This document shows, one piece after another, positions 5,241 through 51,498 of a stretch of DNA of 64,000 nt (the first letter of the stretch is position 1; each line of letters begins with the position of its first letter). The notes beneath the pieces are model-generated. The model saw only the letters and a list, made by a program, of their open reading frames with translations. It searched no databases and was not told the DNA's origin. Where the stretch lies: the sequence record NC_048048.2, one strand, 5' to 3'. A program made the position numbers and the translations under genes.

Positions 5241-5246
5241 CCCGTC

Positions 5247-5381: not shown

Positions 5382-5384
5382 CCG

Positions 5385-5947: not shown

Positions 5948-5952
5948 CACCC

Positions 5953-6720: not shown

Positions 6721-6725
6721 GGCCC

Positions 6726-7049: not shown

Positions 7050-7173
7050 GGCCGCCACCGCCCAGGCTTAACCTTAACGTGGCGTTAAGGTTAAGGCCGA
7101 AAATAGTTCAAGAAAGCTGTTGACAGCATAGGAGGCTTATGCGAGAAAGGCTCATCGAAACGGGAGACACCCC

Positions 7174-7689
7174 ATGGACGACACCTATCCGCCCCTGACC
7201 CCCGGCCAGCAAGCCGCCCTGGTCGCCTTCGCCGACCAGCATGGCGGCCTGGGCGAGGCCTGGAAAGAGGCCCTGAGCGACGCCTGGAGGACGTGCAGCG
7301 AGCCCGATGCGCTCAAGGCCGACCTGCGGACCATCCGCAACACCTATGGCCCCTCCTGGCTCTATGACGAATACGCCTGGGGCTGGCGCCCGACCCTTCC
7401 CGACTGGGAGCGCGCCGGCCGCTGGACCGACACCCCGCCGCAGCCGACGCCGGGCAAGGCTCGCTGGAGCGCCGCCTTCGACCCGCCGGCCATCGGCGAC
7501 CGGGTGCGCGTGACCACCAACGGCCTGGGCTGGGCGCGGGTCACCGGCTACTTCGTCGAAGCCGACTGGCTGGGCGTGATTGTCAAGCTGGAGGCCCCGG
7601 CCGACTGGTATGTCAAACAGAACGGCGGCAACGTCCCCGGCCACAGCTTCGGGACCGAGATCGCCCTGACCGACCCCGCGACCGACTGA
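7174..7689 (+). CDS. Hypothetical protein
   Basis: Promoter 7120 plus GGGAGACACCCC leader. Confidence 0.85.
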   Translation: MDDTYPPLTPGQQAALVAFADQHGGLGEAWKEALSDAWRTCSEPDALKADLRTIRNTYGPSWLYDEYAWGWRPTLPDWERAGRWTDTPPQPTPGKARWSAAFDPPAIGDRVRVTTNGLGWARVTGYFVEADWLGVIVKLEAPADWYVKQNGGNVPGHSFGTEIALTDPATD

Positions 7690-7869
7690 CCTGGACGGCC
7701 CTGGCTGGGAGACCAGCCGGGGCGAGGCCTAACCCGGCGCGGTTAACCTTAACCGCCCATTAAGGTTAACCGCCGGCGCCCTGGGGCGGGCGAAAGAAAA
7801 TGCAAGAAAACTGTTGACACGCATCTGAGGGCTATGCGAGAAAGGGCCATCGAACAACGGAGGCCCCTC

Positions 7870-8712
7870 ATGGCCAAGCTATTCAGCGACCTTCAGGACC
7901 TTGCCAACTCGACCTATGTCGTGCGCATCGTCGACAATGGCGGCCAGAGCGCCGACCGCTACACGATCGTCACCGCCGATGGCGACTATTACGCCTACAG
8001 CGCCAATCCCGCCCATCCCCAAGGCGTGGGCCTGAGCGGCGAGGGCATCGACCCGCAAGTGCTGGTCGACTGGGTGGAGCGCGGCGAAGCCGTCGACCTG
8101 ACCATCGGCGAGCTACCCGAGGCCGCCGCCCGCTGTCTGCTGGCGTCGATCAACGCCAGCGTCGAGGACTTCCTGTCGGCTGTCGAGGACCCGACCAGCA
8201 ACGCCGTGGCCCCGACCCGCGAAAAGGCGGAGATCAATGACGGCGTGATGGATTGCTTCGGCAAGGGCATCTATCGCGTGGGCGAGGGTTTCGCCGTGCG
8301 CATGGATGGCCTGGACGCGGGCGATGATCGCGGCCCCTTCATGAGCGCTGTCGAGGCGGTCAAGGCCACCCTCCCCGATGAATACGCCTGGGCTGGCGAG
8401 GAATACCTGTCGCCGCGCGACATGACCAAGATCACGCCCGAAGCCAAGCCGCTCGTTCTGGTCCACGCCCTGGAGGCCATTCGCGACTATGAATATCAGC
8501 GCGACAACCCCGGCTCGTTCTTCGACGGGCTGAACGAGGACGACACTGACGCGGGCCTGGGCATCGTGCGCCGCACGCGCTACCTGTCCAAGGTCACCGA
8601 TGATGCGACCATCGTCGGGCTGATCGGCGAGGCGCCGGCCTTCGCCCTGGCCCATGAATGTCTCGACCAACTGTGGACCCTGGCGCAAGAGCGGTGGGAG
8701 GCGGGCCAGTGA
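7870..8712 (+). CDS. Hypothetical protein (acidic)
   Basis: Promoter 7814, GGAGG RBS; start reassigned to MAKLF. Confidence 0.85.
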   Translation: MAKLFSDLQDLANSTYVVRIVDNGGQSADRYTIVTADGDYYAYSANPAHPQGVGLSGEGIDPQVLVDWVERGEAVDLTIGELPEAAARCLLASINASVEDFLSAVEDPTSNAVAPTREKAEINDGVMDCFGKGIYRVGEGFAVRMDGLDAGDDRGPFMSAVEAVKATLPDEYAWAGEEYLSPRDMTKITPEAKPLVLVHALEAIRDYEYQRDNPGSFFDGLNEDDTDAGLGIVRRTRYLSKVTDDATIVGLIGEAPAFALAHECLDQLWTLAQERWEAGQ

Positions 8713-8912
8713 GCGCCCGCGAACGCCGCGCCCTCTCCGAACTGCTGGCCCTGTTCCACGCGGTCAACAGCGGCCACGTCAAGGGCCGCAACCCCTACGC
8801 CTTCCCGGCCGTCAAGCTCGCCAACGAGGTATTGACGGGCGACCCGCTGGACGGGGTTTCCACGTCGCCGAAGCCCTGGACCGGCATCGCGAGGCGGACG
8901 GCAAGGCCTTGA
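8709..8912 (+). CDS. Small hypothetical protein
   Basis: GTGA overlap with the upstream stop. Confidence 0.6.
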   Translation: MSARERRALSELLALFHAVNSGHVKGRNPYAFPAVKLANEVLTGDPLDGVSTSPKPWTGIARRTARP

Positions 8913-9067
8913 TTTTCGAGGTCGGCGGTTGCCCGGACGGCTGCTTGCTGTCCTACAGCGGCGCGGTTCCGCGCTGCGTCAACTGCGACACCGAATATCC
9001 CGAAGAAAACGGTTGACAGCATAAGGGAGCTATGCGAGAAAGGGTCATCAACGGAGACACCCCGCCC

Positions 9068-9208
9068 ATGTGGACCGAAAAGACCTTCAAGACCCGCGCC
9101 GCCAAGGAGGCCTGGATCGCCCGCAATGAAGACCGCTATCAGATCGTCGAGATCGTGGTCTGCAACGCCTACGGCGTGACCTACAAGCCCCTCCGACGCG
9201 TCTACTAG
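9068..9208 (+). CDS. Small hypothetical protein (46 aa)
   Basis: Promoter 9013, GGAGACACCC leader; MWTEKTFKTRAAKEAWIARN... Confidence 0.75.
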   Translation: MWTEKTFKTRAAKEAWIARNEDRYQIVEIVVCNAYGVTYKPLRRVY

Positions 9209-9218
9209 GAGACCTCGC

Positions 9219-9410
9219 ATGATCCCCGACTCGGTCCGTAACCCGCAAGATCATTGGACCCCCATCGCCACCCGCGCCAAGGCTGACGCCCTGGCCTATC
9301 GCTACAACCAAGATGACGCCGGCCCCGGCCTCTACGAGGTCCACGAAAAGGGCGAAAGCTTCGCCATCGCCTACTATGACGAAGACGGCGCCTTCTGCGG
9401 CTACGTCTAA
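9219..9410 (+). CDS. Small hypothetical protein
   Basis: AGGAG RBS; followed by a terminator. Confidence 0.75.
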   Translation: MIPDSVRNPQDHWTPIATRAKADALAYRYNQDDAGPGLYEVHEKGESFAIAYYDEDGAFCGYV

Positions 9411-9428
9411 CCCGCTCCTGTCAACTTG

Positions 9429-9466
9429 AAGGCCGGCGCCGCTCTCCTGGCGCCGGCCTTTTTCTT
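9429..9466 (+). terminator. Intrinsic terminator
   Basis: AAGGCCGGCGCC/GGCGCCGGCCTT stem plus TTTTTCTT. Confidence 0.85.
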
Positions 9467-9619
9467 GCCCGCCGCCTGGGTCTTAACCTTAAGGCGAGAT
9501 TAAGGTTAACGCCGCCTTAAGGTTAACCGGTGCCCCGCATCCCGCCCGGATGCAAAAAACCTGTTGACACGCATTTCGACCCTATGCGAGAAAGGCGACG
9601 AACACGGGAGACACCCCTT

Positions 9620-10618
9620 ATGACCACGACCATTCCCGGCGCCGAGCATACGATGATCGGACAAGCCGCCTATCGCTCGACCAAGCGCCCCGACCAAGTG
9701 CGCGAGATGGCCTATGGCGCGTTCCCGGCCGCGACGTCGGACTCGCCCTTCGCCGTCAAGCCGGCCTGTGGCAAGGTCCCGAGCGCGCGCGTGCTGGAGG
9801 ACTTCGACCCCGCCGACGTCTTCACGACCAGAGCCAATGATCGCGGCGGCTTCTATGCCTCCGCCAACTTCGGCGGCTCTGAGGTGTCGTGGATCAGCAT
9901 CGCCGGCTATGGCGACACCGAGGAGGCCGCCCGCGCCGATCTCATGGCCCGGTTCATCGCCGACCGCGACGGCAAGGGCAAATTTGGCCCTCACCATCCC
10001 CTGGTCGGCTATGACTGGGGCTATAAGCTCGCCCCGTTCTGGGACATGCTGGAGCGCGAGGCCGCCATTCGCCAGCCCTTCAAGCGCCAGCTTTACCTGG
10101 GCAAGCTGAAGTCCGGCCGCCCTAATCCCAAGGGCTTTGACGTGTTCGTCGATGTCGAATGGACCGGCGTGCGCCTGTCGCTGTCGGGCGTCATCGGCCC
10201 CAAGGCCAATGGCAACGCCTGGGACGGCGCAGGCCAGATCGTCGGCAGTCTCAAGCGCAAGGACTTTCTGGAGTTCGCCCCGTCCTGGCATTATGGATCG
10301 GCCCTTGACGGTCTGGTCCAGGCCTGGACCCGCTGGCACCTGAACGACCTGCGCGCCGGCACGCTTCGGCAGGAAGACCACCTGCGCGGCTATGAGGCCA
10401 AGCGCAACATTGAGCAGGCCAAGGCCGCCGGCGCCCATTCTCTCGACGCCACCCGCGCCGAACTGGCGCGCGTCCATATGGAGCCCGACACCTGGGAGCG
10501 CCACAACGGCCGGCCCTATAGCTACGGCTCCGCATGGCTTCGCGAGGAGGTCCCCACCTACGTTCTCGACTTCCTGCGCAATCTCCCCGCCCCCACCAAA
10601 ATCAGCCCCTGGAGGTAA
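9620..10618 (+). CDS. Hypothetical protein (332 aa; WHLNDLRAG / YGSAWLREE motifs)
   Basis: Promoter 9564 plus GGGAGACACCCC leader; start reassigned. Confidence 0.85.
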   Translation: MTTTIPGAEHTMIGQAAYRSTKRPDQVREMAYGAFPAATSDSPFAVKPACGKVPSARVLEDFDPADVFTTRANDRGGFYASANFGGSEVSWISIAGYGDTEEAARADLMARFIADRDGKGKFGPHHPLVGYDWGYKLAPFWDMLEREAAIRQPFKRQLYLGKLKSGRPNPKGFDVFVDVEWTGVRLSLSGVIGPKANGNAWDGAGQIVGSLKRKDFLEFAPSWHYGSALDGLVQAWTRWHLNDLRAGTLRQEDHLRGYEAKRNIEQAKAAGAHSLDATRAELARVHMEPDTWERHNGRPYSYGSAWLREEVPTYVLDFLRNLPAPTKISPWR

Positions 10619-10625
10619 CCCGCCC

Positions 10626-11060
10626 ATGGCCATCAACACCGCCGGCCTCGTCGGCAAGCTCAAGGAAGCCCTCGCCGCCGCCCCCAACCTGACCCTATGG
10701 GCCAAGGAACGCGGCCTCTTCCATCAGAACGTTTCGGCCGCCGCGCGCGGCGACACCGTGCCGCAAGAAAGCATCGCCAAGGCCCTGGGCTTCCGACGCG
10801 TCCACGTCCAGGCCTATCTGGCGCCGGGCGAAGCCCTGCCGCTCCTGCCGCCCGGCTGGGAGGAGGTGCTTCCCGGTTCGGCGACCCCGGTCGACTGGAA
10901 GCCCCGCGACAAGGCCGCCGCCCCCGCCCCGCGCCGGGTCGGTTCGCCCGACCAGATGGCCAAGGCCCGCGACGCGCGCCGGCCGCGTTCCGCGCCGGTC
11001 CAGCCCCCGGCCCAAACCGCCGGCAAGCCTCGCCGCAAGAAAGTGCAAGAAACCGGTTGA
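10626..11060 (+). CDS. Putative HTH DNA-binding protein
   Basis: GGAGG RBS; NLTLWAKERGLFHQNVSAAARGDTVPQESIAKALG resembles an XRE/Cro-type helix-turn-helix; basic Pro-rich tail. Confidence 0.6.
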   Translation: MAINTAGLVGKLKEALAAAPNLTLWAKERGLFHQNVSAAARGDTVPQESIAKALGFRRVHVQAYLAPGEALPLLPPGWEEVLPGSATPVDWKPRDKAAAPAPRRVGSPDQMAKARDARRPRSAPVQPPAQTAGKPRRKKVQETG

Positions 11061-11110
11061 CAGCATAAGGCGGCTATGCGAGAAAGGCTCATCACTTCTG
11101 GAGCAAGCCC

Positions 11111-11320
11111 ATGGCCGCCTTCATCTGCACCGCCGATCTCAACGCCCTGGTCGAGGACATCGCCTATGACGTGGAGATGGAAGACCGCGCCGCCGAGGAA
11201 CTCGACGGCCTGGACTTTGGCGACCGCTGTTACTACGGCGACCGCGCTTACCATGGCCAGCTTGAGCTTGCCCGGATCATCGAGACGGCCGTCGCCGCTC
11301 ATCCCATCCTGTACGCCTAG
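11111..11320 (+). CDS. Small acidic hypothetical protein
   Basis: Promoter 11057, GGAG RBS. Confidence 0.75.
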   Translation: MAAFICTADLNALVEDIAYDVEMEDRAAEELDGLDFGDRCYYGDRAYHGQLELARIIETAVAAHPILYA

Positions 11321-11336
11321 CAGAGGAGGCGCCGCT

Positions 11337-11549
11337 TTGCCACGCTACCGCACCGACTACAGCGAAGACGACGGAAAAACCGTCATCATCGAGGAAGGCC
11401 TGACGAGGACGCAGGCCATGCAAAAGGCCGCGATCCTGTCGCGCAAGCACGGGACCGCCTACGCCGTCGCCTCCGACGACAAGGGCCGCGACACCGGCCA
11501 AAGGGTCTATGCTGACGGCCGGTTCAGCTACCAAGACGACAAGTTCTAA
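11337..11549 (+). CDS. Small hypothetical protein
   Basis: GAGGAGG RBS, TTG start (LPRYRTDY...). Confidence 0.65.
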   Translation: MPRYRTDYSEDDGKTVIIEEGLTRTQAMQKAAILSRKHGTAYAVASDDKGRDTGQRVYADGRFSYQDDKF

Positions 11550-11555
11550 GGCAAG

Positions 11556-11580
11556 AGGCCCGGAGCGATCCGGGCCTTTT
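11556..11580 (+). terminator. Intrinsic terminator
   Basis: AGGCCCGGA-GCGA-TCCGGGCCT plus T run (GNRA loop). Confidence 0.85.
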
Positions 11581-11725
11581 GTCTGTCCCCCGCCCGGCGA
11601 TAACCTTAACGCCGCGTTAAGGTTAACCCCCTGGGACGGGGGGCGCCGCCGCAAAAACTGCAAGAAAACTGTTGACACGCATTTCGACCCTATGCGAGAA
11701 AGGCGCATCAACCACGGAGGACAAC

Positions 11726-12457
11726 ATGTCCACGCACCCGCTGATCGCCGCCGCCCTGGCCAATCTTCGCGAAGGCCCGGCCATGGTCGCCGGCCCCGAC
11801 CACGTCACCAAGGTCACGTCCTACGAACTGACCCGCGCGGTCATGTTCAAGGCCGCCGACCAGATCGAACGGGCTCTGAGCGATTTCCCCGCCCCGCCCG
11901 CCTGCCTGGGCGCCTTCCTGATGACCGAGTTCGACCGCCTGGGCGACAACTGGGGCGCCCTGGGCGACGCCATCACCGAAGGCGAGGCCCTGGCCAATGC
12001 TGAAACCGTCCTGGCGTGGTACTTCAACGCCACCCGTGACGACGGCGACCCGGACGGCTACACGCTCAAACTCGCTGGCGCCCTGCCCAACGACGCCGAG
12101 GCCGCCCGCATCCGCCGCGACTACGCCGCCGCCCTGGAGGCGCAAGAGCAGGCCAAGGCCGCCGAGGCTCGCGCCTTCGCCGACCGTCACGCCGCCCTAG
12201 GTTCGGCCGAAGCCGTCGCCGACCTCCTGGGCTCGCTGTTCGACACGCCGCGCACCGCCGCCGAGGCCCTGGGCTACAGCTTCCATTTCGTCCCGGTGAT
12301 CGGCGGCGAGATCGAGGGCGAACGCGCCTGGATCGGCGAGGACAAGGCCGGCGAGCGCGTCCATGGCGACTACGCCAGCGCCGACCAAGCCGCCCGCGCC
12401 GCCCTCATCTACCACGTGCGCGCCAACCAAGCCGCCCAAATCGTCAAGGACGCCTGA
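11726..12457 (+). CDS. Hypothetical protein
   Basis: Promoter 11672, GGAGG RBS; start reassigned to MSTHP. Confidence 0.85.
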
Positions 12458-12459
12458 CC

Positions 12460-13086
12460 ATGACCGCCGCCGCATCCCTCTTCGAACAAGCCCAGATCGA
12501 GGCCGCTCAAGCCGCCATCGACGCCAACACCGCGCGCGTTGGGCTGGAGACCGAGGACGCCACGCCCGGAACCGACCTTTTCCACCTGCTGGGCTCGCTG
12601 CTGACCTGGGCCGACGCCTGGGCCGTGGACTTCGACGACATCCTGTCTCAGGTCCGCGAACCGGTGAACCTCTCCAAGACCGTGACCCGCTTTGATCCGG
12701 CCACCTATGGCCAAGACCAGCGGCTTGCGGCCATCCGCGCCAATCTCGACCAGCGCAACACCCCTTCCGTTCCGGTCCTGACCCGCGACGAGGCCGAAAC
12801 CGAGGCCATGCGCGATCTCGCCGCCGTGGTCGGCAAGGTGATCAAGGTCCACGATATCACCGGCTATTTCGGCGAGACGGGCCAAGAGGACTTGCGCCCC
12901 CACGACGGCGCGCCGGCCTTTTCGGTGATCGTCCTGCCGTCCGACCGGGACGACGTGATCTACTGGAATGACGAGCATCTGGACGTTCGGTGGAACGTCA
13001 CCCCCGCGCCGGGCGAAACCCGCCTCTACGAACTGCGCTCGCTCTGGGTGTTCGGGCGCGGCTATGTCATCGAAGGCGAGGGCTGA
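12460..13086 (+). CDS. Hypothetical protein
   Basis: Operon-packed (TGACCATG junction). Confidence 0.8.
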   Translation: MTAAASLFEQAQIEAAQAAIDANTARVGLETEDATPGTDLFHLLGSLLTWADAWAVDFDDILSQVREPVNLSKTVTRFDPATYGQDQRLAAIRANLDQRNTPSVPVLTRDEAETEAMRDLAAVVGKVIKVHDITGYFGETGQEDLRPHDGAPAFSVIVLPSDRDDVIYWNDEHLDVRWNVTPAPGETRLYELRSLWVFGRGYVIEGEG

Positions 13087-13088
13087 TC

Positions 13089-13397
13089 ATGGCCATGCCC
13101 CTGGGCTTGCGGACCACCGCCACCAGCTACGCCATTGACGTGGACGATGACCAGTTTCTGGCCATGATCCAGGCCGAAGGCTACAAGGGCGGTGATTTCG
13201 AGCCGTCCCTGTTCGACAAGCTGCAAAAGACCCCCGCCCGCGACATCGAATATAACGGCCACTTCGGCGCGTCGGTCTATTTCACCCTCACCGAGGAAGA
13301 CGACACCCCCGCCCTACGCGCCGAGCTTGGCCGGATGATCGCCGAACACCTAACCCTCTGCGTCGCCCACATGGCGACCTACGACAAGGACGCCTGA
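13089..13397 (+). CDS. Hypothetical protein
   Basis: TGATCATG junction; start reassigned. Confidence 0.75.
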   Translation: MAMPLGLRTTATSYAIDVDDDQFLAMIQAEGYKGGDFEPSLFDKLQKTPARDIEYNGHFGASVYFTLTEEDDTPALRAELGRMIAEHLTLCVAHMATYDKDA

Positions 13398-13399
13398 CC

Positions 13400-13705
13400 A
13401 TGCTGAATATCGAGGACCAGACGATTCGCCTTCGCGAGGAAGGCAAGAACAAGACCACCACCGTCATTGGCGGGGTGCTGCTGTTCTTCTCCTATTCGAC
13501 CCTGGTCGGCTTTCGCTGTCCGCGCCTGGGGATGGTGATCAACCCGGCCGCCAAGAGCTACGGCGTCACCACCGCCCGCCACGTCGGCGAATTTGGCCTA
13601 GGCGCGCCGGGCGTGGGTAAAACCGCCACCGAAGAAGACTTTCAGCGCCTCGCCATGGGCGCGGTCATGGGTTCGTCCGGGCCTGACTACCTACTGTTGA
13701 ATTAA
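13400..13705 (+). CDS. Hypothetical protein
   Basis: TGACCATG junction. Confidence 0.75.
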   Translation: MLNIEDQTIRLREEGKNKTTTVIGGVLLFFSYSTLVGFRCPRLGMVINPAAKSYGVTTARHVGEFGLGAPGVGKTATEEDFQRLAMGAVMGSSGPDYLLLN

Positions 13706-13821
13706 GCCCCGAGACGAGCACTAGGGCTGTCACGAATCCCCTCATCTATGACAGCTTAAGAGCCCGTTTAGTCTTCCCTGTACTCTGTTGCGCCAGTATC
13801 GGCGCGGAAAGTGATGCGCCT

Positions 13822-13884
13822 ATGAAGCTCCTCGAAGGTGGCGGACTGCTGGCCCTGTGCTTCCTTTTCTGGCTCCTCCACTGA
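13822..13884 (+). CDS. 20-aa hydrophobic micropeptide, copy 1 (MKLLEGGGLLALCFLFWLLH)
   Basis: Near-identical protein at 17561 with almost only synonymous nucleotide differences. Confidence 0.75.
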   Translation: MKLLEGGGLLALCFLFWLLH

Positions 13885-13948
13885 CAAGGCTGTTGACAGC
13901 ATCAAGGCCCTATGCGAGAAAGGCTCATCGCCACCGGAGACACCCGCG

Positions 13949-14215
13949 ATGACCGATTACGACGATTGGGGCCAAGAGGCCTATATGGACCACCTCCATG
14001 ATCAGGCCGTTGACGAGGCTTTCGAGCGCCACGCCGACGACGCCTATGAGGACGACCTGGGCGCCGAAGACCCGGACCTCGAATTCCCCGATGAGGCGGA
14101 CGACGAGGAAGACCTTCGCCGGGCCGAAGGGCTCATGCCCTGGGCGACCCCCGAGGGCGTCGAGCCTGGGCAGTTCCCCCGCCGGGCCTATGACGACGAC
14201 GAAATCCCGTTCTGA
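13949..14215 (+). CDS. Highly acidic protein ending in an SSB-like tail (YDDDEIPF)
   Basis: Promoter 13893, GGAGACACCC leader; 32 of 88 residues D/E, no Lys. Confidence 0.85.
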   Translation: MTDYDDWGQEAYMDHLHDQAVDEAFERHADDAYEDDLGAEDPDLEFPDEADDEEDLRRAEGLMPWATPEGVEPGQFPRRAYDDDEIPF

Positions 14216-14228
14216 CCTCCTCCCTTCG

Positions 14229-14255
14229 AAAGGCCCCGCGCGGGCCTTTCTTTTT
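14229..14255 (+). terminator. Intrinsic terminator
   Basis: AAAGGCCC/GGGCCTTT stem plus CTTTTT. Confidence 0.75.
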
Positions 14256-14425
14256 GCCCCGCGCCTGGGGTTAACCTTAACGCCGCCTTAAGGTTAACCC
14301 GGCCGGATCGTTTTTCGTCTTTTGTGTCGGGCCGTCTTTCGTTTTCCGTGTCGAGGTGCAAGAAAGCTGTTGACAGCATAAAAGCCCTATGCGAGAAAGG
14401 CTCATCGCAACCAAGGAGCCCGACC

Positions 14426-14617
14426 ATGGGACTCAAGATCGAAATCGACACCGGCAACGAGGCCTTCCAAGGCGTGGCCGGCGAGCATTGCGCCACCCTC
14501 CTGCATGAGGTCGCCCGCAAGCTCGATCAAGGCGCCCGCGCCGGCAATATCTACGACGGCAACGGCAACAAGGTCGGGACCTACGAACTCGACCACACCG
14601 ACGCCCCGGAGTCGTGA
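14426..14617 (+). CDS. Small hypothetical protein
   Basis: Promoter 14370, AAGGAG RBS; MGLKIEIDTGNEAF... Confidence 0.8.
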   Translation: MGLKIEIDTGNEAFQGVAGEHCATLLHEVARKLDQGARAGNIYDGNGNKVGTYELDHTDAPES

Positions 14618-14620
14618 GCC

Positions 14621-14947
14621 GTGGCCAGCTACGTCATCCAGATCAGCGTGAACGTGGAGGTCGATGACCTCCCCGTTCTGTTGGCCGCCGCCATGGCCAA
14701 GGCCACGGGCGACGACGGCCTGACCGAAGATCAAGCCCGCGATATCCTGACCAACTCCGACCCTCTGGGCCGGCCGGATGTCAAGGCCTGTCTGACCATG
14801 CTGTTTGATCCGGGCGTCAGCCCGGACGGCACGTCGATCAATGACAGCATCGTCACCCGCGAGGACTACGACCAAGACGAGGCCATGGACGCCTATGAGG
14901 CCGCCCACGGCGAGGACGAGGAAGGGGAAGGCGATGACGAGGACTAG
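14621..14947 (+). CDS. Hypothetical acidic protein
   Basis: GTG start, operon-packed. Confidence 0.75.
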   Translation: MASYVIQISVNVEVDDLPVLLAAAMAKATGDDGLTEDQARDILTNSDPLGRPDVKACLTMLFDPGVSPDGTSINDSIVTREDYDQDEAMDAYEAAHGEDEEGEGDDED

Positions 14948-15284
14948 GAGCAAGAAGCGCGTCCCGCAACGCCTGCTTCTGGCCAATCGCGCGCCCCTGG
15001 TCGCCGGGCCTGACCCCGCCACCCGCCGCCACTGGTGGGAGCTTCTGGAGAGCGTCGGCGAGCCGCGCGACCTTGAGGCCCTGCTGGTCGTGGCGATTGA
15101 CCAAGACGCGGCCGAAACCGTCGCCGGGGTCTTTCCGCTCGCCGGCGCCGACTATGAAGCCCAGAGCCGCAAGGCCGACGCCCTGGCCGCCGCCACCACC
15201 CGCCCCCGCAGCCCTGGCCAGCGCGACGCGCTCAACGCCTATGTGCTGCACGTCAATGACCCGAACGCCGAGCATCATCCATGA
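14934..15284 (+). CDS. Hypothetical protein
   Basis: Start reassigned to MTRTRSKK; short overlap with the upstream gene. Confidence 0.65.
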   Translation: MTRTRSKKRVPQRLLLANRAPLVAGPDPATRRHWWELLESVGEPRDLEALLVVAIDQDAAETVAGVFPLAGADYEAQSRKADALAAATTRPRSPGQRDALNAYVLHVNDPNAEHHP

Positions 15285-15532
15285 GCTATTCCGGCCCGAT
15301 CACCATCGCCCAAGGCCAGCGCTTCCAACTAGACAGCTACGGCAACGGCGCGGCCTATGCCTTCTATGACCGCACCGCCGGCGCCAGCGTCTGGCTGGAC
15401 GGCGACGACGCCACCCAGTTTCGCGCCGACTTCGACAACGCCGAAGACCGCCGCCCCCATGACGGGCCTGACCAGATCATGGCCCATCTGTGGGACGAAC
15501 ACGACTACGGCGCCGCCGCCACGCCGCTCTAA
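15281..15532 (+). CDS. Hypothetical protein
   Basis: ATGA overlap; followed by a hairpin at 15535-15566. Confidence 0.75.
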   Translation: MSYSGPITIAQGQRFQLDSYGNGAAYAFYDRTAGASVWLDGDDATQFRADFDNAEDRRPHDGPDQIMAHLWDEHDYGAAATPL

Positions 15533-15675
15533 GTCAAGGCCCGCCCATCCCCCTGGGCGGGCCTTGTCCTGGGCGATCGGCGTTAACCTTAACGCGCAAG
15601 AAAACTGTTGACACGCATTGCAGCCCTATGCGAGAAAGAGCGCCTAGGCCGCTTTGGCCCCTGGAGACTTGCGTC

Positions 15676-16257
15676 ATGGAACACCGCGACTTCGTTCCCC
15701 ACATCATCACCGCCCGCACCGTGGATGGAACCGTCTACTACGAGTCCAGCCACTGCACCGCCTTCCATCTGGGCTATGCCCGCGCCATGGACAAGGCCGA
15801 CGCCGAGCGCCGGGCCGCCGCCTGGAAGCGCGCGGAAAAGGACGGCGCCCCGCAAGCCACCATCGACGAGGGAACCTATGGGATCACCGTCGTGGCCACC
15901 ACCTGGGAGGCCCTGGACAAGGCCCGCGCCCATCGCGCCGAGCTTGAGCGCCTGGAGGCCAATTTCCTCGCCGAGGAGGCCCATGACGACCAGTTCGACG
16001 ACTATGAAGAACCGGTCATGAGCCCCGAGGATATCGCTGCCGAGGAAGAGGCCGCCCGCGACTATCTGGCCACCATCCAGCCCCATAAGGCCGGCGACGT
16101 GGTGCGGATCACCGACGAGGGCCATCCCCATTTCGGGGCGCTGGCCACCGTCGCCGAGGCCGAATGGAGCGGCTATCTCGTCCTTGACCTGGGCGCGGGC
16201 CTGACCTGGGGCTGGGCGACGGGCGTGCAATCGACGGCCGATTTCCCCCAGCCTTGA
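15676..16257 (+). CDS. Hypothetical protein
   Basis: Promoter 15608, GGAGA RBS; start reassigned to MEHRD. Confidence 0.8.
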   Translation: MEHRDFVPHIITARTVDGTVYYESSHCTAFHLGYARAMDKADAERRAAAWKRAEKDGAPQATIDEGTYGITVVATTWEALDKARAHRAELERLEANFLAEEAHDDQFDDYEEPVMSPEDIAAEEEAARDYLATIQPHKAGDVVRITDEGHPHFGALATVAEAEWSGYLVLDLGAGLTWGWATGVQSTADFPQP

Positions 16258-16365
16258 AAGCTGGCCTCGCGCCAGCAAAAAGGCCCGTCCCCTGGCGGGG
16301 CGGGCCTTGTCCGGTCCGATCGGGATTAACCTTAACGAGAGATTAAGGTTAACGCGCCCTTAAGG

Positions 16366-16611
16366 TTAACTGGTGGCGTTCTTGCGCGTCGTGGCCTGGG
16401 GATTGGCCTTGAGCCATGCGTCGGCTTCCGTGCGGGTCGAGAACGGCGCCCCGCCAATGCCCTGCGTGCCGTCATCCCATTGAATGGTCCAACCCACGTC
16501 CTTGATTTCCCAATCCTCCGCCACGCCATGGGGAATCGGCGTATGAAGCGCGATGCGGGTAAAGGGCGCGCGCTTGAGTTGACGGATGCGCGCCGGAATG
16601 ACTTGCGGCAT
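16366..16611 (-). CDS. Hypothetical protein; the only substantial minus-strand gene inside the cassette array
   Basis: Own promoter on the minus strand (TTGACA 16690-16685, then GCTACATT); protein-like composition. Confidence 0.6.
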   Translation of the reverse strand: MPQVIPARIRQLKRAPFTRIALHTPIPHGVAEDWEIKDVGWTIQWDDGTQGIGGAPFSTRTEADAWLKANPQATTRKNATS

Positions 16612-16659
16612 GTGTGGAATTTCCTTGACAAAGGCCTTGCCCCATGGGCGGCCCGAAAG

Positions 16660-16697
16660 GCGAATGTAGCAAGCGGCGCTTTCGTGTCAAGAAATGC
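16660..16697 (-). promoter_or_regulatory. RpoD-type promoter (CGCATTTC-TTGACA-N14-GCTACATT)
   Basis: 7/8 match to the Caulobacter -10 GCTANAWC; divergent from cassette promoter 16717. Confidence 0.6.
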
Positions 16698-16789
16698 GAC
16701 ATGGGCTAGAATCCTGTTGACACGCATTGCGGTCCTATGCGAGAAAGATCGGGCAAAGGCGCATCCCGCGCCGCTGGGAGACACCCCGC

Positions 16790-17560
16790 ATGGACCTGAC
16801 CACCTTTACGGCCAAGGCTGATTTCGTGCTCTGCAATGAGCCGGTGACCATCACCGTCAAGCCCGCCGGCCGCCCGCTCTACCTGTCGTTTTCCATCGAC
16901 CAGATCGGCATGATCGGCGGCGCCGAGGAGCTTTACGCCAAGGCCGAACAACACGGCGTCGAGGACCTGATAACGGTTCTCAACATTTCCAACGTCCTGT
17001 CGCTGAAGTCCATCGAGACCTATGACGACGAAGACCGCGAGGCCGTCGAAAGCCTGCGCTACGCCCTGCTCATGCTCGACGGCGAGCGCTACGCTTCGGA
17101 TGTCCAGTTCGAGGACGTGGACGAGGCCGAGTTTTCCAACCGCGACGACACCATTGACAGCCGGCAAATCGTCGAGCGGGTCGAGGTGCTTCGGAGCGCC
17201 CTGGAAACCGCCGGCTTCGACACCGCCGACCTGTCCGCCCTGGAAGACCTCGACGCCGACGAAGCCGTCAAGGACGCCGACCAGCGCGACGCCTTCAACG
17301 CCATCCGCGAGGAATTCCTGATCCTGGCGCGCATGGTCGAGGAGGGCGGCAACTACGGCGAGGATTGGCGGTTCGGCGCGACTCTGGTCCGCGAATCCTA
17401 CTTCACCGAGTTCGCGCAAGAAGAGTGCGAAAGCCTGGGCTTCATCTCCAAGGACTTCCCGTCCTGGATCGCCATCGACTGGGAAAAGACCGCCGAAACG
17501 ATGCTACACGACTACACCGAAATCGACTTCGACGGCGTGAGCTACTACGTCCGCGCCTAG
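16790..17560 (+). CDS. ArdA-like acidic anti-restriction (DNA mimic) protein
   Basis: Very D/E-rich; C-terminal FPSWIAIDWEKTAETMLHDYTEIDFDGVSYYVR resembles the ArdA C-terminus from memory. Confidence 0.6.
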   Translation: MDLTTFTAKADFVLCNEPVTITVKPAGRPLYLSFSIDQIGMIGGAEELYAKAEQHGVEDLITVLNISNVLSLKSIETYDDEDREAVESLRYALLMLDGERYASDVQFEDVDEAEFSNRDDTIDSRQIVERVEVLRSALETAGFDTADLSALEDLDADEAVKDADQRDAFNAIREEFLILARMVEEGGNYGEDWRFGATLVRESYFTEFAQEECESLGFISKDFPSWIAIDWEKTAETMLHDYTEIDFDGVSYYVRA

Positions 17561-17623
17561 GTGAAGCTCCTCGAAGGCGGCGGCCTGCTCGCGCTCTGCT
17601 TCCTCCTCTGGTTGCTTCACTAA
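17561..17623 (+). CDS. 20-aa hydrophobic micropeptide, copy 2 (MKLLEGGGLLALCFLLWLLH)
   Basis: GTG immediately after the ArdA-like TAG; synonymous divergence from 13822. Confidence 0.75.
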   Translation: MKLLEGGGLLALCFLLWLLH

Positions 17624-17626
17624 ACC

Positions 17627-17662
17627 CGGCCGGCGTCCATGACCTGGGCGCCGGCCTTTTCT
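17627..17662 (+). terminator. Intrinsic terminator
   Basis: GGCCGGCG../..CGCCGGCC stem followed by TTTTCTT. Confidence 0.65.
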
Positions 17663-17720
17663 TACCGCGCCGATCGGGGTTAACCTTAACGCCGTCTTAA
17701 GGTTAACGGCGGGCCTGGAG

Positions 17721-17849
17721 GCGAGGGCGTCAAGGCCGCGAGCTAGGATTACACGCGATGGCTTAGCCGGCGTCCAGCCGGCGGCGCCTTCGACCACCGC
17801 GAGGCGGCCTTGACCCTCGCAATCTCGCCGATCCGCGACCAAGTGTCAA
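17721..17849 (-). ncRNA. Candidate antisense small RNA with its own promoter
   Basis: Minus-strand TTGACA (17849-17844)-N15-GCGAGATT (17828-17821); 11+6 bp closing stem 17721-17739/17804-17820; no credible ORF. Confidence 0.45.
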
Positions 17850-17934
17850 CCGTTTTCTTTTTCCAAGAAACCTGTTGACACGCATCGAACGCCTATGCGA
17901 GAAAGACTCAACGTCAACGCCTGGAACCCTATCC

Positions 17935-18591
17935 ATGCCCCGCACCGTCACCAAACAGGTCTACACCTTCAAGGAACTGAATCCCAAGGCCAAGCAAAAG
18001 GCCATCGAGTGGTATCGTGGCCTGAACGATCAAGACTCCGGTTGGTGGGATTTCGTCTATGACGAAGCCGACCGCATCGCCGAAGCCTTCGGGATCACCC
18101 TGCGCCGCAAGGAAGCCGGCAAGCCCAATAGCGGCCCGGACATCATGTTCACCGGCTTCTGGAGTCAAGGCGACGGCGCCTGTTTCCAAGGCCGCTACGA
18201 GTCGCCCCAAACCCCGGCCGTCGAAGCCTTCGCCGCCCTGGGGATCGAAGACGCCACGCTCAAGGCTCTGGCCGCCCGCCTCGACGCCCTGAGCGCCAAG
18301 GTGCGCTTGATCAGCACGGTCAAGCACTCCGGTCACTACTATCACGAGTATTGCACCGACTTCGAAACCGAGCGCATGGTTCCCGACGACGCCGGCGACG
18401 ACTTCGATATCTACGATTTCGACCACGAGGACGAAAAGGAACTGATCGACATTCTTCGCAGCTTCATGAAGTGGATTTATCGCCAGCTTGAGGCCGTGGA
18501 CGAAGATCGCAATTCCGATGAGACGATCAGCGAAACCCTGACCGACTCCGATTACGAATTCGAGGCGGACGGCTCGCCGACCAACGACTAG
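17935..18591 (+). CDS. Conserved MGE protein (family often auto-annotated 'antitoxin of toxin-antitoxin stability system')
   Basis: Motifs VYTFKELNPKAKQKAIEWYR and FTGFWSQGDGACF recalled from alphaproteobacterial ICE/plasmid proteins; function unproven. Confidence 0.6.
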   Translation: MPRTVTKQVYTFKELNPKAKQKAIEWYRGLNDQDSGWWDFVYDEADRIAEAFGITLRRKEAGKPNSGPDIMFTGFWSQGDGACFQGRYESPQTPAVEAFAALGIEDATLKALAARLDALSAKVRLISTVKHSGHYYHEYCTDFETERMVPDDAGDDFDIYDFDHEDEKELIDILRSFMKWIYRQLEAVDEDRNSDETISETLTDSDYEFEADGSPTND

Positions 18592-18765
18592 GCCAAGCCC
18601 GCCGCGCCCGGCCTCAACGCCGGGCGCGTGTCGGGTTTTGGTTTTTCAAGGTCCTGTTAAGGTTAACGAAAAAAGCCCTCGGACGGCCTGAGAAAAACGC
18701 AAGAAAACTGTTGACACGCATCCAAGCCCTATGCGAGAAAGGCTCATCGCAACGGGAGACACCCC

Positions 18766-19053
18766 ATGACGACCCAAGCCAAGAAGCGCCGCAAGCGCTA
18801 CCCGCCCAAGAGCGACGCGGCCAAGGCCCGCGCCGCCGCCAAGAGCAAGGCGTTCTTCGCCCGTCACGCGCTCAAGGCCACCGAGGCCACGATTGCCGCC
18901 ATGAAGGCCGGCGATCAAAAGGCCGTCCAACGCCACGCCAAGGACGCCCGGCGCCTGACCCGCTGGATGAACCACAAGCGCGACATCGCCGCCGCCTTCG
19001 CGGCCGTCTTCAACATTCGGGCCGCCGCCCAAGCCCTGAGAGCCGCCGCATGA
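18766..19053 (+). CDS. Basic Lys/Arg/Ala-rich small protein
   Basis: Promoter 18711 plus GGGAGACACCCC leader. Confidence 0.8.
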   Translation: MTTQAKKRRKRYPPKSDAAKARAAAKSKAFFARHALKATEATIAAMKAGDQKAVQRHAKDARRLTRWMNHKRDIAAAFAAVFNIRAAAQALRAAA

Positions 19054-19265
19054 CCCGTCGCCCTGCCTTTCTGACCGTCCTGGGCGGGATTGGCCTCATC
19101 CTGGCCAGCTTCGTCCTTTCGGCCGCCAGCGCCCCGGAAAAGCGGGTTCTCGTGGGTCAATACTGCGACGGCGACCCCGTGCGCCTCTACGGCCTGGAAG
19201 ACGGCGAGGAAGCCGCGCAAGCGTGCGCCATCGTCGAAGTCCACGCCCTGCCCAAGGGCTTCTGA
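19050..19265 (+). CDS. Small secreted/membrane protein
   Basis: ATGA overlap; N-terminal hydrophobic segment. Confidence 0.65.
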   Translation: MTRRPAFLTVLGGIGLILASFVLSAASAPEKRVLVGQYCDGDPVRLYGLEDGEEAAQACAIVEVHALPKGF

Positions 19266-19267
19266 CC

Positions 19268-19525
19268 ATGGCCGCCCCGAACGACAGCCGCGAGGAGCCG
19301 GTCAAGGTCGAAGACCTCAAGGGCGGCATGATGTGCGATCTTGAGGGCGACATGTACGCCGACAACGCCGGGCGCTTCCCGGAATTCGAGTTCGCCTATG
19401 CCGTCGTCGTCGAAGTCGACACGGCCCCGCGCTACGAGGCGCCGGGGACGGTCCTGGTCGAGTTCGACAAGATCACCGTGGCCTTTCCCAAGGGCCACAC
19501 CCTGCCGACCATCAAGGAACCCTAG
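19268..19525 (+). CDS. Hypothetical protein
   Basis: TGACCATG junction. Confidence 0.7.
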   Translation: MAAPNDSREEPVKVEDLKGGMMCDLEGDMYADNAGRFPEFEFAYAVVVEVDTAPRYEAPGTVLVEFDKITVAFPKGHTLPTIKEP

Positions 19526-19527
19526 AC

Positions 19528-20061
19528 ATGGAACGCCTCAACGTCCACGTGCTGACCGTCACCTATGACAGCGGCAACCCCGTCCCGCCGTTCGTCGCCC
19601 TGGGCATGTCCAAGGAGGAACTTGACGACACCCTGGAGGCCCTGGCGCGCGAGGAAGTCGATAACCGCTATTTCGAGGAAGAAGACCTCTTAGACGACCT
19701 CGCCAAGTTCCTGACCGCCGAACGCGTCGCCGAGCTTGAGCCCCTGGGCCTGGACGCCATCGGCCTACTGACTCCGGTCGAAATCGTCGACATGGCCAAG
19801 CGCTTCGCCTCGATCACGCCAAGCTTTGACGTGCTCCCGCTCTACCGCGACCCGCCGCCCGTCCGCGCCTTCGATCTCGACGACCGCGAAGCCGCCGCCG
19901 TCCTGACCGGCCTGCGCATGATCCAAGCCCAAGGCGTCCCGGACGATCTCGACGACCTCGCCACCAATGGCGGCGCCTTCGAGCCCCTGGACGGCGACGC
20001 CATCGACGGGCTCTGTGTGCGGATCAATTTCGACGTGACCGGCGAGGCGCCGGCCTCCTGA
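19528..20061 (+). CDS. Hypothetical acidic protein
   Basis: Operon-packed. Confidence 0.8.
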   Translation: MERLNVHVLTVTYDSGNPVPPFVALGMSKEELDDTLEALAREEVDNRYFEEEDLLDDLAKFLTAERVAELEPLGLDAIGLLTPVEIVDMAKRFASITPSFDVLPLYRDPPPVRAFDLDDREAAAVLTGLRMIQAQGVPDDLDDLATNGGAFEPLDGDAIDGLCVRINFDVTGEAPAS

Positions 20062-20141
20062 CGCAAGAAAGCTGTTGACAGCATAATCCGCCTATGCGAG
20101 AAAAGGCTGTCAACGGCGATCCCCGCCGCATGGAGACACCC

Positions 20142-20486
20142 ATGAAGTTCATCAAGACCGACATCCTCGACCACGGCCGCGCCTCGACCCTGCGCAACGC
20201 CCTGGGCACGGCCCTGGAGCGCTACACCGAAATCGGCAAGGAATTCGAGGGCTACCTGAACGACTATCAGGCCCTGGACGAGGCGGGCAAGGAAGCCTGG
20301 AAGGCCCGCAACCACTGGATCAACCCGCGCGCCCTGCCCGACCTCAAGACCCAGTTCGAGCGCCAAGCCGCCGACGTGCAAGACCTCATCAACTGGCTTG
20401 ACGGCGACAAGTTCATGAACGAAGACGGCGATTTCCCCAAAGGGACCGAGTTCACCATTGTCGCCGGCCTGATCCGCGACTTCTAA
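20142..20486 (+). CDS. Hypothetical protein
   Basis: Promoter 20075, GGAGACACCC leader; start reassigned. Confidence 0.8.
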   Translation: MKFIKTDILDHGRASTLRNALGTALERYTEIGKEFEGYLNDYQALDEAGKEAWKARNHWINPRALPDLKTQFERQAADVQDLINWLDGDKFMNEDGDFPKGTEFTIVAGLIRDF

Positions 20487-20497
20487 ACGCCCTGGTC

Positions 20498-20524
20498 AAG
20501 GCCCGCCCTCACGGCGGGCCTTTT
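20498..20524 (+). terminator. Intrinsic terminator
   Basis: AAGGCCCGCC-CTCAC-GGCGGGCCTT plus T run. Confidence 0.85.
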
Positions 20525-20680
20525 CCTTGACCTCGCGCCGTTGTTAACCTTAACGTGCAATCGTTCGCCTGTTAACCTTAACGGGACATGCCTGATCCGT
20601 TAACCATAGCCTGCAAAAAAGCTGTTGACTCGCATCCAAGCCCTATGCGAGAAAGGGTCATCAGCAACGGGAACGATCCC

Positions 20681-21079
20681 ATGACCCAAGAATACACCGC
20701 CGAAGAACGCCAAGCCAAGTTGACCGAAATGGCCGATCACTGGCGCGAGCAACTGAAGGACGCCCAAGCCCGCCTGGACATGACCGTCCTCGTCGGTCAA
20801 GGATTCGTCTGCGCTCTGGAGCGCGATCTTTCCATGGCTATCCGCGCTGACGGTCCCGACCGCTATCGCCTGTGGCCAGTATCGGCGCGCATGGTTCCCA
20901 TCCTCCACTTCACCAAACTTGACGCCATGCGGGTCGCCGCGCACTGGAATGGCAACCTCCCCGACGATAAGCAGGACCTGCGAGTCGTCGCCACCCATTA
21001 CCGCGACGTGCTTCAAGCCTATGTCGAGACCGCAACGGCGCAAATCGCCTGGATCGAAGGCGGCTGCAAGGCCGCCTGA
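20681..21079 (+). CDS. Hypothetical protein
   Basis: Promoter 20625; start reassigned to MTQEY. Confidence 0.75.
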   Translation: MTQEYTAEERQAKLTEMADHWREQLKDAQARLDMTVLVGQGFVCALERDLSMAIRADGPDRYRLWPVSARMVPILHFTKLDAMRVAAHWNGNLPDDKQDLRVVATHYRDVLQAYVETATAQIAWIEGGCKAA

Positions 21080-21269
21080 CCTTGACGCCCTCCGGCTCCG
21101 GCCGGAGGGTTAATTTCTGCCCAGCCCGCGTTAAGGTTAACCCGCCGCCGGCCTGGGATTAACCTTAACCCGCAACCGTTTGCGGGTTAACCATTCGATG
21201 CAAGAAAGGTGTTGACACGCATTTAGGCCCTATGCGAGAAACGCCTATCAGCAACCGGGAAACACCCCC

Positions 21270-51039: not shown

Positions 51040-51498
51040 ATGTGCCGCTGGTGCGGCGCCGTCATCCTCCGGGCCGACGGCTCGGTCAACAAGCGCAAGC
51101 AGTTCTGCGATCGCCACTGCGTCCACGAATTCCTCCTGAGGACCGACCCGACCCGCTGGCGCAAGAACACCTACAAGGAGTCGATGGGCATCTGCCACCG
51201 GTGCAGCGAGGTCTTCGACTACTACGAGGACGACGGATGGGAGGCCGATCACATCGTGCCGCTCTACCACGCCCACCGGATCGGGGACTGGACCGCCTGG
51301 GACCCAGAGAACCTCCAGCTTCTCTGCATCCCCTGCCACAAGGACAAGACGCAGGAAGACTACGCCACCTACGGCCGGCCCTGGCTGGGTGAAAGCCCTG
51401 ACGTCCTGCCCGACAGCGACGTGCCCCACCCCGACGACCTGCCCGACTTCGGCGAGGAAGACGAGATCGACTTCGACGCCGATGAAATCCCGTTCTAA
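51040..51498 (+). CDS. HNH endonuclease with acidic SSB-like tail (start uncertain)
   Basis: CRWC..FC...C, CHRC, WEADHIVPL, NLQLLCIPCHKDKT; ends DFDADEIPF. Confidence 0.8.
   Translation: MCRWCGAVILRADGSVNKRKQFCDRHCVHEFLLRTDPTRWRKNTYKESMGICHRCSEVFDYYEDDGWEADHIVPLYHAHRIGDWTAWDPENLQLLCIPCHKDKTQEDYATYGRPWLGESPDVLPDSDVPHPDDLPDFGEEDEIDFDADEIPF

What the first reader, a model, noticed from the sequence alone, without database searches (positions are those of the whole stretch)
13949..14215. Acidic protein that is essentially an SSB C-terminal tail: candidate decoy for host genome-maintenance enzymes
Seen: 88 aa, 32 D/E, no Lys, no room for an OB fold, ending YDDDEIPF, in its own promoter-terminator cassette. 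The HNH nuclease at 51040-51498 likewise ends DFDADEIPF. Established: bacterial SSB ends in DDDIPF-type tails that dock ExoI, RecQ, PriA, RecO, RNase HI and others. Inference: an SSB-tail mimic that sequesters or redirects host repair and replication enzymes on entry, and an HNH nuclease using the same tail to reach replication forks.
Basis: partly seen in the sequence, partly recalled or inferred. Interest (0 to 1): 0.7.

Follow-up and report, generated by a model that had tools for sequence, protein, structure and literature searches.

The report
Phage protein carrying host SSB tail
An early gene of the giant Caulobacter phage CcrSC encodes a small, extremely acidic protein with no DNA-binding fold. 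[quoted passage not shown]

Summary
The window is bases 1-64000 of Caulobacter phage CcrSC (Bertelyvirus). The ORF at 13949-14215 is CcrSC_gp025, annotated as hypothetical. It is 88 aa with 32 D/E, no Lys and net charge -27, and it ends YDDDEIPF.

- **Expression signals:** It has its own promoter-like site, one of 18 same-sense copies confined to the 23.9-kb terminal repeat, and a hairpin-plus-T terminator.
- **Match to host:** SSBs of Caulobacter and close relatives end DLDDEIPF (118 of 120).
- **Chance:** DEIPF occurs three times in the 294-kb unique genome, each time as the last five residues of an ORF. About 8e-5 would be expected by chance.
- **Conservation:** All 11 Bertelyvirus genomes keep the last 33 residues of gp025 unchanged, with only synonymous differences. 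The acidic N-half changes freely. A more distant relative still ends DDDEIPF.
- **Not an SSB:** No OB fold, Pfam, PHROG or PDB match was found, and no SSB gene was found in the phage.
- **Other tail carriers:** The HNH tail is less constrained. It is absent from phiCbK-type homologues and cut off by one in-frame stop in 7 of 11 Bertelyviruses.
- **Wider pattern:** In phage contigs this tip sits mostly on non-SSB proteins.

The decoy function is plausible but untested. I found no published description of a tail-only protein of this kind.

The parts
13893..13920 (+). Promoter-like site (TTGACAGCAT-N8-CTATGCGAGAA) upstream of gp025
   Evidence: It is one of 18 exact same-sense matches, all within 3646-21240 of the terminal repeat, against 0.01 expected. 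It is conserved in CcrBL9 and C2. Activity was not tested, and the generic sigma-70 scan did not call it.
13936..13939 (+). GGAG ribosome-binding site, 9 nt before the ATG
   Evidence: Read directly from the sequence.
13949..14215 (+). CcrSC_gp025 coding sequence (88 aa plus stop)
   Evidence: Homologues occur in all 11 Bertelyvirus records at 84-90% identity, two places per record because of the terminal repeat.
13949..14113 (+). Variable hyper-acidic N-terminal half (residues 1-55; 25 D/E, 1 R)
   Evidence: Composition is. AlphaFold2 predicts helices at 4-35 and 49-59 with low confidence. Codons 15-55 show 5-14 non-synonymous against 2-7 synonymous differences between lineages.
14114..14212 (+). 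Invariant C-terminal module (residues 56-88, LRRAEG...DDDEIPF)
   Evidence: There are 0 non-synonymous against 2-7 synonymous differences in the three pairwise comparisons, and every column is invariant. The model shows coil here.
14192..14212 (+). SSB-type tip DDDEIPF at the free C-terminus
   Evidence: The last six residues equal those of Caulobacter-lineage SSBs. The tip is kept in the divergent Logan relative L006.
14228..14255 (+). Intrinsic-terminator-like hairpin plus T5
   Evidence: The fold is -16.4 kcal/mol. Equivalent hairpin-plus-U structures of different sequence occur in C2 and L006.
14270..14298 (.). Palindrome GTTAACCTTAA-N7-TTAAGGTTAAC holding a TTAA-N7-TTAA (CtrA-box consensus). 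It is a neighbour of the cassette, not part of the protein.
   Evidence: There are four exact copies in the window, all in the terminal repeat. The consensus, and CtrA sites in the terminal repeats of these phages, are described in PMC9437464.
51040..51498 (+). CcrSC_gp112, an HNH endonuclease with a 40-aa acidic extension ending DADEIPF
   Evidence: PF01844 at 35.8 bits over residues 52-105 and phrog_11604. The tail is shown.
51475..51495 (+). SSB-type tip DADEIPF of the HNH protein
   Evidence: It is absent from phiCbK and Kabachok homologues and separated from the gene by one in-frame stop in the C2 group.

Best explanation
gp025 is a stand-alone imitation of the protein-docking end of the host's SSB. 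It is probably made from the terminal repeat early in infection by host RNA polymerase. It is a largely unfolded or helical polyanion.

Its free C-terminal ...DDDEIPF should fit the pockets with which Caulobacter SSB-partner enzymes grip the SSB tip. In E. coli the known partners include the clamp-loader chi subunit, PriA, RecQ, RecO, RecJ, exonuclease I, RNase HI and Ung. Because gp025 cannot bind ssDNA, occupying those pockets would uncouple the enzymes from SSB-coated DNA. That makes it a competitive decoy.

The acidic N-half may add affinity by lying on the adjacent DNA-binding surfaces of the same enzymes. The whole protein would then imitate 'SSB tail plus nucleic acid'.

**Shown:** the tip identity, its terminal position, its selective constraint, the lack of an OB fold, and the transcription signals.
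**Inferred:** binding, competition, early timing, and the role of the N-half.
For: - **Match to host:** the tip matches the host lineage. 118 of 120 closest relatives of a Caulobacter sp. SSB end DLDDEIPF, and Caulobacter and Phenylobacterium genomes show FSADLDDEIPF. LDDEIPF is the common alphaproteobacterial SSB C7 motif (PMC13490951).
- **Specific to SSB in bacteria:** 103 of 112 bacterial ORFs carrying the same DNA pattern are SSB-like.
- **Not chance:** all three DEIPF occurrences in the phage are exact C-termini, against 8e-5 expected.
- **Selection:** the last 33 codons show 0 non-synonymous against 2-7 synonymous changes. Codons 15-55 show 5-14 non-synonymous changes. The divergent relative L006 keeps DDDEIPF while the residues before it differ.
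- **Not an SSB:** there is no Pfam, PHROG or PDB hit and the model has no strands. Charge and hydropathy lie far on the disordered side.
- **No phage SSB found:** none is annotated, and none was detected with an SSB profile or with other tail-bearing phage proteins as queries. Host SSB is therefore likely to be in play during infection.
- **Transcription signals:** the gene has its own promoter-like site and terminator in the terminal-repeat array, and two gene copies per genome.
- **Precedent:** published work shows phage proteins copying the host tip (PMC13687109; bioRxiv 10.64898/2026.04.29.721553).
Against: - No interaction, expression or phenotype data exist for this protein or any homologue.
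- The family is confined to one phage genus, so conservation is measured over shallow divergence (84-90% identity).
- Residues -7 and -8 (D, Y) differ from the host's (L, D).
- The constrained block is 33 residues, far more than a tip needs, so a second, unknown contact is implied.
- One tip per monomer would need high copy number to compete with tetrameric SSB.
- The phage's own T7-like polymerase or helicases could be the true docking partners.
- The structure model is low confidence (pLDDT 57).
Confidence: 0.45

Rival explanations
1. The tip docks on the phage's own replication proteins, following the T7 model, in which the acidic Phe-ended tails of the SSB and the helicase both bind the polymerase. 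gp025 would then regulate or hold a place in the phage replisome rather than attack host enzymes.
For: - CcrSC encodes a T7-like DNA polymerase, two helicases and a Pol III epsilon-like exonuclease, and no SSB was found. Its replisome therefore probably reads the host-type tip.
- In viral contigs the same tip sits on primases, DnaB-like and SF2 helicases, primase-helicases and Sak4-like ATPases. This looks like intra-replisome docking.
- The T7 tail-docking model itself is my own knowledge. The relevant literature is listed (PMC10359462, PMC12339929).
Against: - gp025 lies in the terminal-repeat gene array, 110 kb from the replication module, under a host-type -35 element.
- It has no recognisable enzymatic or DNA-binding domain for the tail to deliver.
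Confidence: 0.17
2. gp025 is a specific bivalent inhibitor of one host enzyme, for example a nuclease or helicase that threatens incoming DNA ends. The acidic helices would mimic DNA and the tip would act as an anchor. It would not be a general decoy.
For: - The protein has extreme negative charge, with 25 D/E in 55 residues and predicted helices. This resembles known small acidic phage DNA mimics (own knowledge; gp5.9 is covered in PMC9836394, listed).
- The invariant block is longer than a tip.
- gp025 is the most acidic of the 22 small non-SSB tip-bearing proteins (110 aa or fewer) sampled.
Against: - The N-half is the fast-evolving part, which is unexpected for a precise DNA-mimic scaffold.
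- No homology to any known mimic was found.
- The model confidence is low.
Confidence: 0.2
3. gp025 is a generic acidic anti-restriction or DNA-mimic protein, or a polyanion that binds host SSB's DNA groove, and the SSB-like ending is incidental.
For: - The composition is strongly acidic.
- Several terminal-repeat proteins are acidic.
Against: - The ending is the invariant part of the protein.
- It matches the host SSB tip.
- It recurs on two unrelated proteins of the same phage only at the exact C-terminus.
Confidence: 0.08
4. gp025 is not a real gene, or the motif is a chance feature.
For: The ORF is short, low in complexity and confined to one genus.
Against: - The substitution pattern is purely synonymous in the last 33 codons.
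- The ribosome-binding site, promoter-like site and terminator are conserved.
- The chance expectation is 8e-5.
Confidence: 0.02

Closest known systems
C-terminal tip of bacterial SSB (SSB-Ct; DDDIPF in E. coli, (D)LDDEIPF in alphaproteobacteria)
   Same: Both have an acidic run followed by I-P-F with the Phe as the free C-terminus, preceded by a flexible Pro/Gly-containing stretch. The last six residues are identical to those of Caulobacter-lineage SSBs.
   Different: gp025 has no OB fold and no sign of a tetramerisation domain. In place of a Gly/Gln/Pro-rich linker it has a polyanionic, probably helical N-half.
Phage and prophage SSB-like proteins that copy the host tip (DUF669 proteins, Bas52_0087 of a BASEL phage)
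   Same: These are phage proteins ending in the host's SSB tip, and they have been proposed to plug into host DNA-processing factors (PMC13687109; bioRxiv 10.64898/2026.04.29.721553).
   Different: Those proteins have ssDNA-binding folds and can replace SSB on DNA. gp025 has none, so it can only compete for the partners.
T7 gp2.5 and gp4 acidic C-terminal tails (own knowledge; related papers listed)
   Same: The same acidic, Phe-terminated tail appears on more than one protein of a phage and is used as a shared docking element.
   Different: The T7 tails serve the phage's own polymerase and differ in sequence from the host tip. The CcrSC tails copy the host tip.
Small acidic phage DNA-mimic inhibitors (Ocr, gp5.9, Gam-type; own knowledge; gp5.9 in PMC9836394)
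   Same: These are small, very acidic early proteins aimed at host DNA enzymes.
   Different: gp025 shows no sequence or confident structural likeness to them. The known mimics do not carry an SSB tip.

Membership tests
SSB-Ct-type docking tip (short linear motif) | Phe is the very last residue, with a free carboxylate | tested here: met
   The stop codon follows the Phe codon directly. The same holds in all 11 homologues and in L006.
SSB-Ct-type docking tip (short linear motif) | Hydrophobic-Pro-Phe preceded by three or more acidic residues | tested here: met
   D-D-D-E-I-P-F.
SSB-Ct-type docking tip (short linear motif) | Matches the tip of the host's own SSB | tested here: met
   118 of 120 closest relatives of a Caulobacter sp. 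SSB end DLDDEIPF, and gp025 shares DDEIPF. The SSB of strain CB15 itself was not retrieved by name.
SSB-Ct-type docking tip (short linear motif) | Tip is under purifying selection | tested here: met
   The last 33 codons show 0 non-synonymous against 2-7 synonymous differences.
SSB-Ct-type docking tip (short linear motif) | Binds the tip pocket of SSB-partner proteins | not testable with these tools
   No complex prediction or binding assay was available.
Bacterial-type SSB (PF00436) | OB-fold ssDNA-binding domain | tested here: not met
   There is no Pfam hit at E up to 1 and no PDB sequence hit at E up to 10. The model has helices only. An SSB profile finds nothing in the whole phage.
Acidic DNA-mimic inhibitors (Ocr/ArdA/gp5.9-like) | Very high negative charge in a small early protein | tested here: met
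   Net charge is -27 over 88 aa, and the gene lies in the terminal-repeat promoter array.
Acidic DNA-mimic inhibitors (Ocr/ArdA/gp5.9-like) | Homology or a defined fold that displays charges like a DNA backbone | tested here: inconclusive
   There are no family hits. The model, at pLDDT 57 and pTM 0.20, is too uncertain to judge.
HNH endonuclease (gp112) | HNH catalytic domain | tested here: met
   PF01844 at 35.8 bits against a cut-off of 21.4, and phrog_11604 at E 2.8e-36.

The most novel reading that the evidence does not exclude
gp025 is the minimal form of a wider phage strategy. The host SSB tip would be used as a portable docking motif that phages graft onto many unrelated proteins. A tail-only, DNA-blind version would act as a general switch that disconnects the host's whole SSB-partner network (repair, restart, exonucleases) as soon as the phage genome end enters the cell.
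Probability: 0.3. Interest if true: 0.8.

Novelty: new variant of a known kind. Interest (0 to 1): 0.62.

Why it matters
The SSB tip is the single handle by which well over a dozen bacterial replication, repair and recombination enzymes find their substrate. A natural protein that presents only that handle would be a simple viral way of switching off the whole hub. It would also be a ready-made probe for identifying the hub's members in Caulobacter.

The survey carries its own message. In bacterial genomes the tip marks SSB almost exclusively (103 of 112). In phage contigs three quarters of its carriers are not PF00436-type SSBs (84 of 112). This suggests that motif mimicry of the SSB tip is common in phages and largely unannotated.

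Tried and rejected
- **Searches for relatives of gp025.** The Pfam, PHROG and PDB sequence searches found nothing. The 5.8-billion-protein word search and the 1.84-billion-protein HMMER search found only Bertelyvirus-type relatives, plus one low-complexity hit in a 2108-aa protein that I discount.
- **A hidden phage SSB.** An SSB profile with tails removed, and all tail-bearing viral proteins used as queries, were run against every CcrSC ORF of 50 aa or more. Nothing turned up. A very divergent SSB cannot be excluded.
- **gp372.** There were no Pfam or PDB hits. Its AlphaFold2 model was too poor (pLDDT 60.6) to justify a fold search, and the same applies to gp025. No fold search was run.
- **A split SSB.** I considered whether gp025 is the detached tail of an SSB gene broken from the upstream gene. 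I rejected this. The neighbours have no SSB-like hits, and a promoter-like site and a 243-bp spacer separate them.
- **Host strain SSB.** I could not fetch the CB15 SSB by name. Supplementary tables of PMC13490951 are not held. I used Caulobacter sp. genomes and the 120 closest relatives instead.
- **Literature.** Searches for a tail-only SSB decoy in phages found none.

Full report
**Where the window comes from**

Bases 12000-17000 of the window are 100% identical to the same coordinates of Caulobacter phage CcrSC (MH588547.2, 317,489 bp, genus Bertelyvirus, host C. vibrioides CB15). The finding is the annotated gene CcrSC_gp025, 'hypothetical protein'. It lies inside the 23,946-bp direct terminal repeat, so the genome carries two copies (two places per record).

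**The observation**

- The ORF at 13949-14215 gives 88 residues with 19 D, 13 E, no K and 5 R. Its pI is about 4.05 and its net charge is -27. It ends YDDDEIPF.
- The HNH gene at 51040-51498 (PF01844, 35.8 bits) ends DFDADEIPF.
- Upstream of gp025 lies TTGACAGCAT-N8-CTATGCGAGAA. The looser pattern TTGACA-N10-20-ATGCGANAA has 18 exact matches in the window against 0.01 expected. All are on the + strand and all lie between 3646 and 21240, inside the terminal repeat.
- GGAG sits 9 nt before the ATG.
- A 9-bp GC-rich hairpin plus T5 follows the stop codon. C2 and the metagenomic relative L006 have hairpin-plus-U structures of different sequence at the same place. This argues for a conserved terminator.
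- The generic sigma-70 scan did not call the promoter, so promoter function rests on the repeated motif alone.

**Is the tail more than chance?**

I assembled the unique genome (1-294000) from the window and five fetched stretches.

- Exactly three ORFs end in [ILVMF]-P-F, and all three end DEIPF. They are gp025, the HNH gp112, and gp372 (record 235819-236250, 143 aa, ending EPLDDEIPF). gp372 is outside the window.
- DEIPF occurs nowhere else in 410,760 residues of six-frame ORFs.
- The composition-based expectation for about 520 C-termini is 8e-5.

**Does the tail match the host?**

- A published survey reports LDDEIPF as the SSB C-terminal heptad in 5795 of 18,841 alphaproteobacterial assemblies (PMC13490951).
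- I scanned one genome per species for a GC-rich DDEIPF-stop pattern. It returned a Caulobacter sp. genome, a Caulobacteraceae genome and several Phenylobacterium genomes, whose housekeeping-type SSBs all end FSADLDDEIPF.
- Of the 120 closest database relatives of that Caulobacter SSB (76-98% identity, four of them named Caulobacter sp.), 118 end DLDDEIPF and 2 end DMDDEIPF.
- gp025 therefore shares the last six residues with the host lineage's SSB, gp372 the last seven, and gp112 the last five. The SSB of strain CB15 itself was not retrieved by name.

**Conservation**

- gp025 homologues exist only in the 11 Bertelyvirus records (84-90% identity) and in one Logan contig.
- Residues 56-88 are invariant. 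At codon level this block shows 0 non-synonymous against 2, 5 and 7 synonymous differences in the three pairwise comparisons. Codons 15-55 show 5-14 non-synonymous against 2-7 synonymous differences.
- In the more divergent Logan contig L006 the gene as assembled carries one frameshift. The downstream reading frame still ends DDDEIPF, although the residues just before it differ. An MPW...P-G...P-R pattern is also kept.
- The constrained unit is therefore a 33-residue C-terminal module, not only the tip.

**What gp025 is not**

- It has no Pfam, PHROG or PDB sequence match.
- AlphaFold2, run on a two-sequence alignment, gives helices at 4-35 and 49-59 and a coil from residue 60 onward, with no strands. 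Mean pLDDT is 57 and pTM is 0.20.
- Its charge and hydropathy fall well on the disordered side of the Uversky boundary (0.362 against 0.523).
- It is therefore not an SSB.
- I found no SSB gene in CcrSC. None is annotated. An SSB profile with tails removed gives no hit better than E = 0.5. None of the tail-bearing viral proteins I collected has a relative in the phage.
- The neighbouring genes have no informative matches.

**The other two tail carriers**

- *HNH gp112.* This domain has homologues throughout the phiCbK-like phages of Caulobacter and Brevundimonas, at about 47% identity. The phiCbK and Kabachok proteins end in basic sequences. In the C2 group (seven records) the gene has one in-frame stop, after which the tail-coding stretch is still intact.
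- *gp372.* Its homologues in the C2 group (43% identity) end ...EDHIPFE, so the Phe is no longer terminal.
- Only gp025 keeps a canonical tip in every genome.

**Context from other phages**

- A capped scan of IMG/VR for DDDEIPF-stop gave 119 ORFs in 50 sequence clusters. These included:
  - PF00436 SSBs (22);
  - DUF669 and T7-type SSBs;
  - AEP primases, SF2 helicases, DnaB-like helicases and Toprim-DnaB primase-helicases;
  - a Sak4-like AAA_24 ATPase and an AAA_5 ATPase;
  - Pam3_Gp34-like proteins;
  - many small proteins with no family.
- With one and the same DNA pattern, 103 of 112 bacterial ORFs were SSB-like, against 28 of 112 complete viral ORFs.
- Two caveats apply. The SSB profile was built from the bacterial set, and other SSB families count as 'not PF00436-like'.
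- Among the 22 small non-SSB carriers sampled (110 aa or fewer), gp025 is the most acidic at 38% D/E.
- Two recent papers note that phage SSB-like proteins copy the host tip. My literature searches found no description of an OB-less, tail-only protein.

**Interpretation**

- *Best-supported reading.* The gp025 tip is a functional copy of the host SSB tip. The protein competes with SSB for the tip-binding pockets of host genome-maintenance enzymes. The acidic N-half possibly adds contacts on their DNA-binding surfaces. I rate tip mimicry itself as likely, at about 0.75. I rate the decoy mechanism at about 0.45, because no binding, timing or phenotype data exist.
- *Main rivals.* The tip may dock on the phage's own T7-like replisome, or gp025 may be a specific bivalent inhibitor of a single enzyme.

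The script printed a translation in which the in-frame stop of the C2-group HNH gene is visible. I list no position and no change here.

Noticed in passing
window 3646-21240: There are eighteen same-sense copies of TTGACA(C)GCAT-N8-9-YTATGCGAGAA, all inside the terminal repeat. This looks like an array of promoter-like sites in front of small genes.
   Followed up: partly
window 7742-7770, 14270-14298, 17679-17707, 22959-22987: GTTAACCTTAA-N7-TTAAGGTTAAC palindromes contain the TTAA-N7-TTAA CtrA-box consensus. One lies 20 bp after the gp025 terminator. CtrA sites in the terminal repeats of these phages are already published (PMC9437464).
   Followed up: partly
L010:21819-22250 (CcrSC record 235819-236250, outside the window): A third protein, gp372 (143 aa, no family hit), ends EPLDDEIPF. 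That is the host SSB heptad exactly. In the C2 group the end reads ...EDHIPFE, so the Phe is not terminal.
   Followed up: partly
L254 (phage C2 HNH gene) and six sister genomes: The HNH homologue has one in-frame stop ahead of a still-intact tail-coding stretch. phiCbK and Brevundimonas-phage homologues have basic ends instead.
   Followed up: partly
L006:3755-4212 (Logan contig SRR27946880_1473): A divergent gp025 homologue is assembled with one frameshift. It could be a real change or an assembly error. The downstream frame keeps DDDEIPF.
   Followed up: partly
loci L012-L130 and L257 onward (IMG/VR), L131-L250 (genomes): The host-type SSB tip marks SSB in bacteria (103 of 112). In viral contigs it sits mostly on other proteins (84 of 112), including helicases, primases and many small unknown proteins.
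   Followed up: partly
window 51516-52403: The gene next to the HNH (gp113) matches RlaP, an RNA-repair-pathway polymerase-beta-family nucleotidyltransferase (PF10127, 59 bits).
   Followed up: no
L011:27491-30000 (record 291491-294307) and window 1-764: The annotated large terminase gene runs across the start of the right terminal repeat (293544). Its 3' end should therefore also lie in the first ~760 bases of the window.
   Followed up: no
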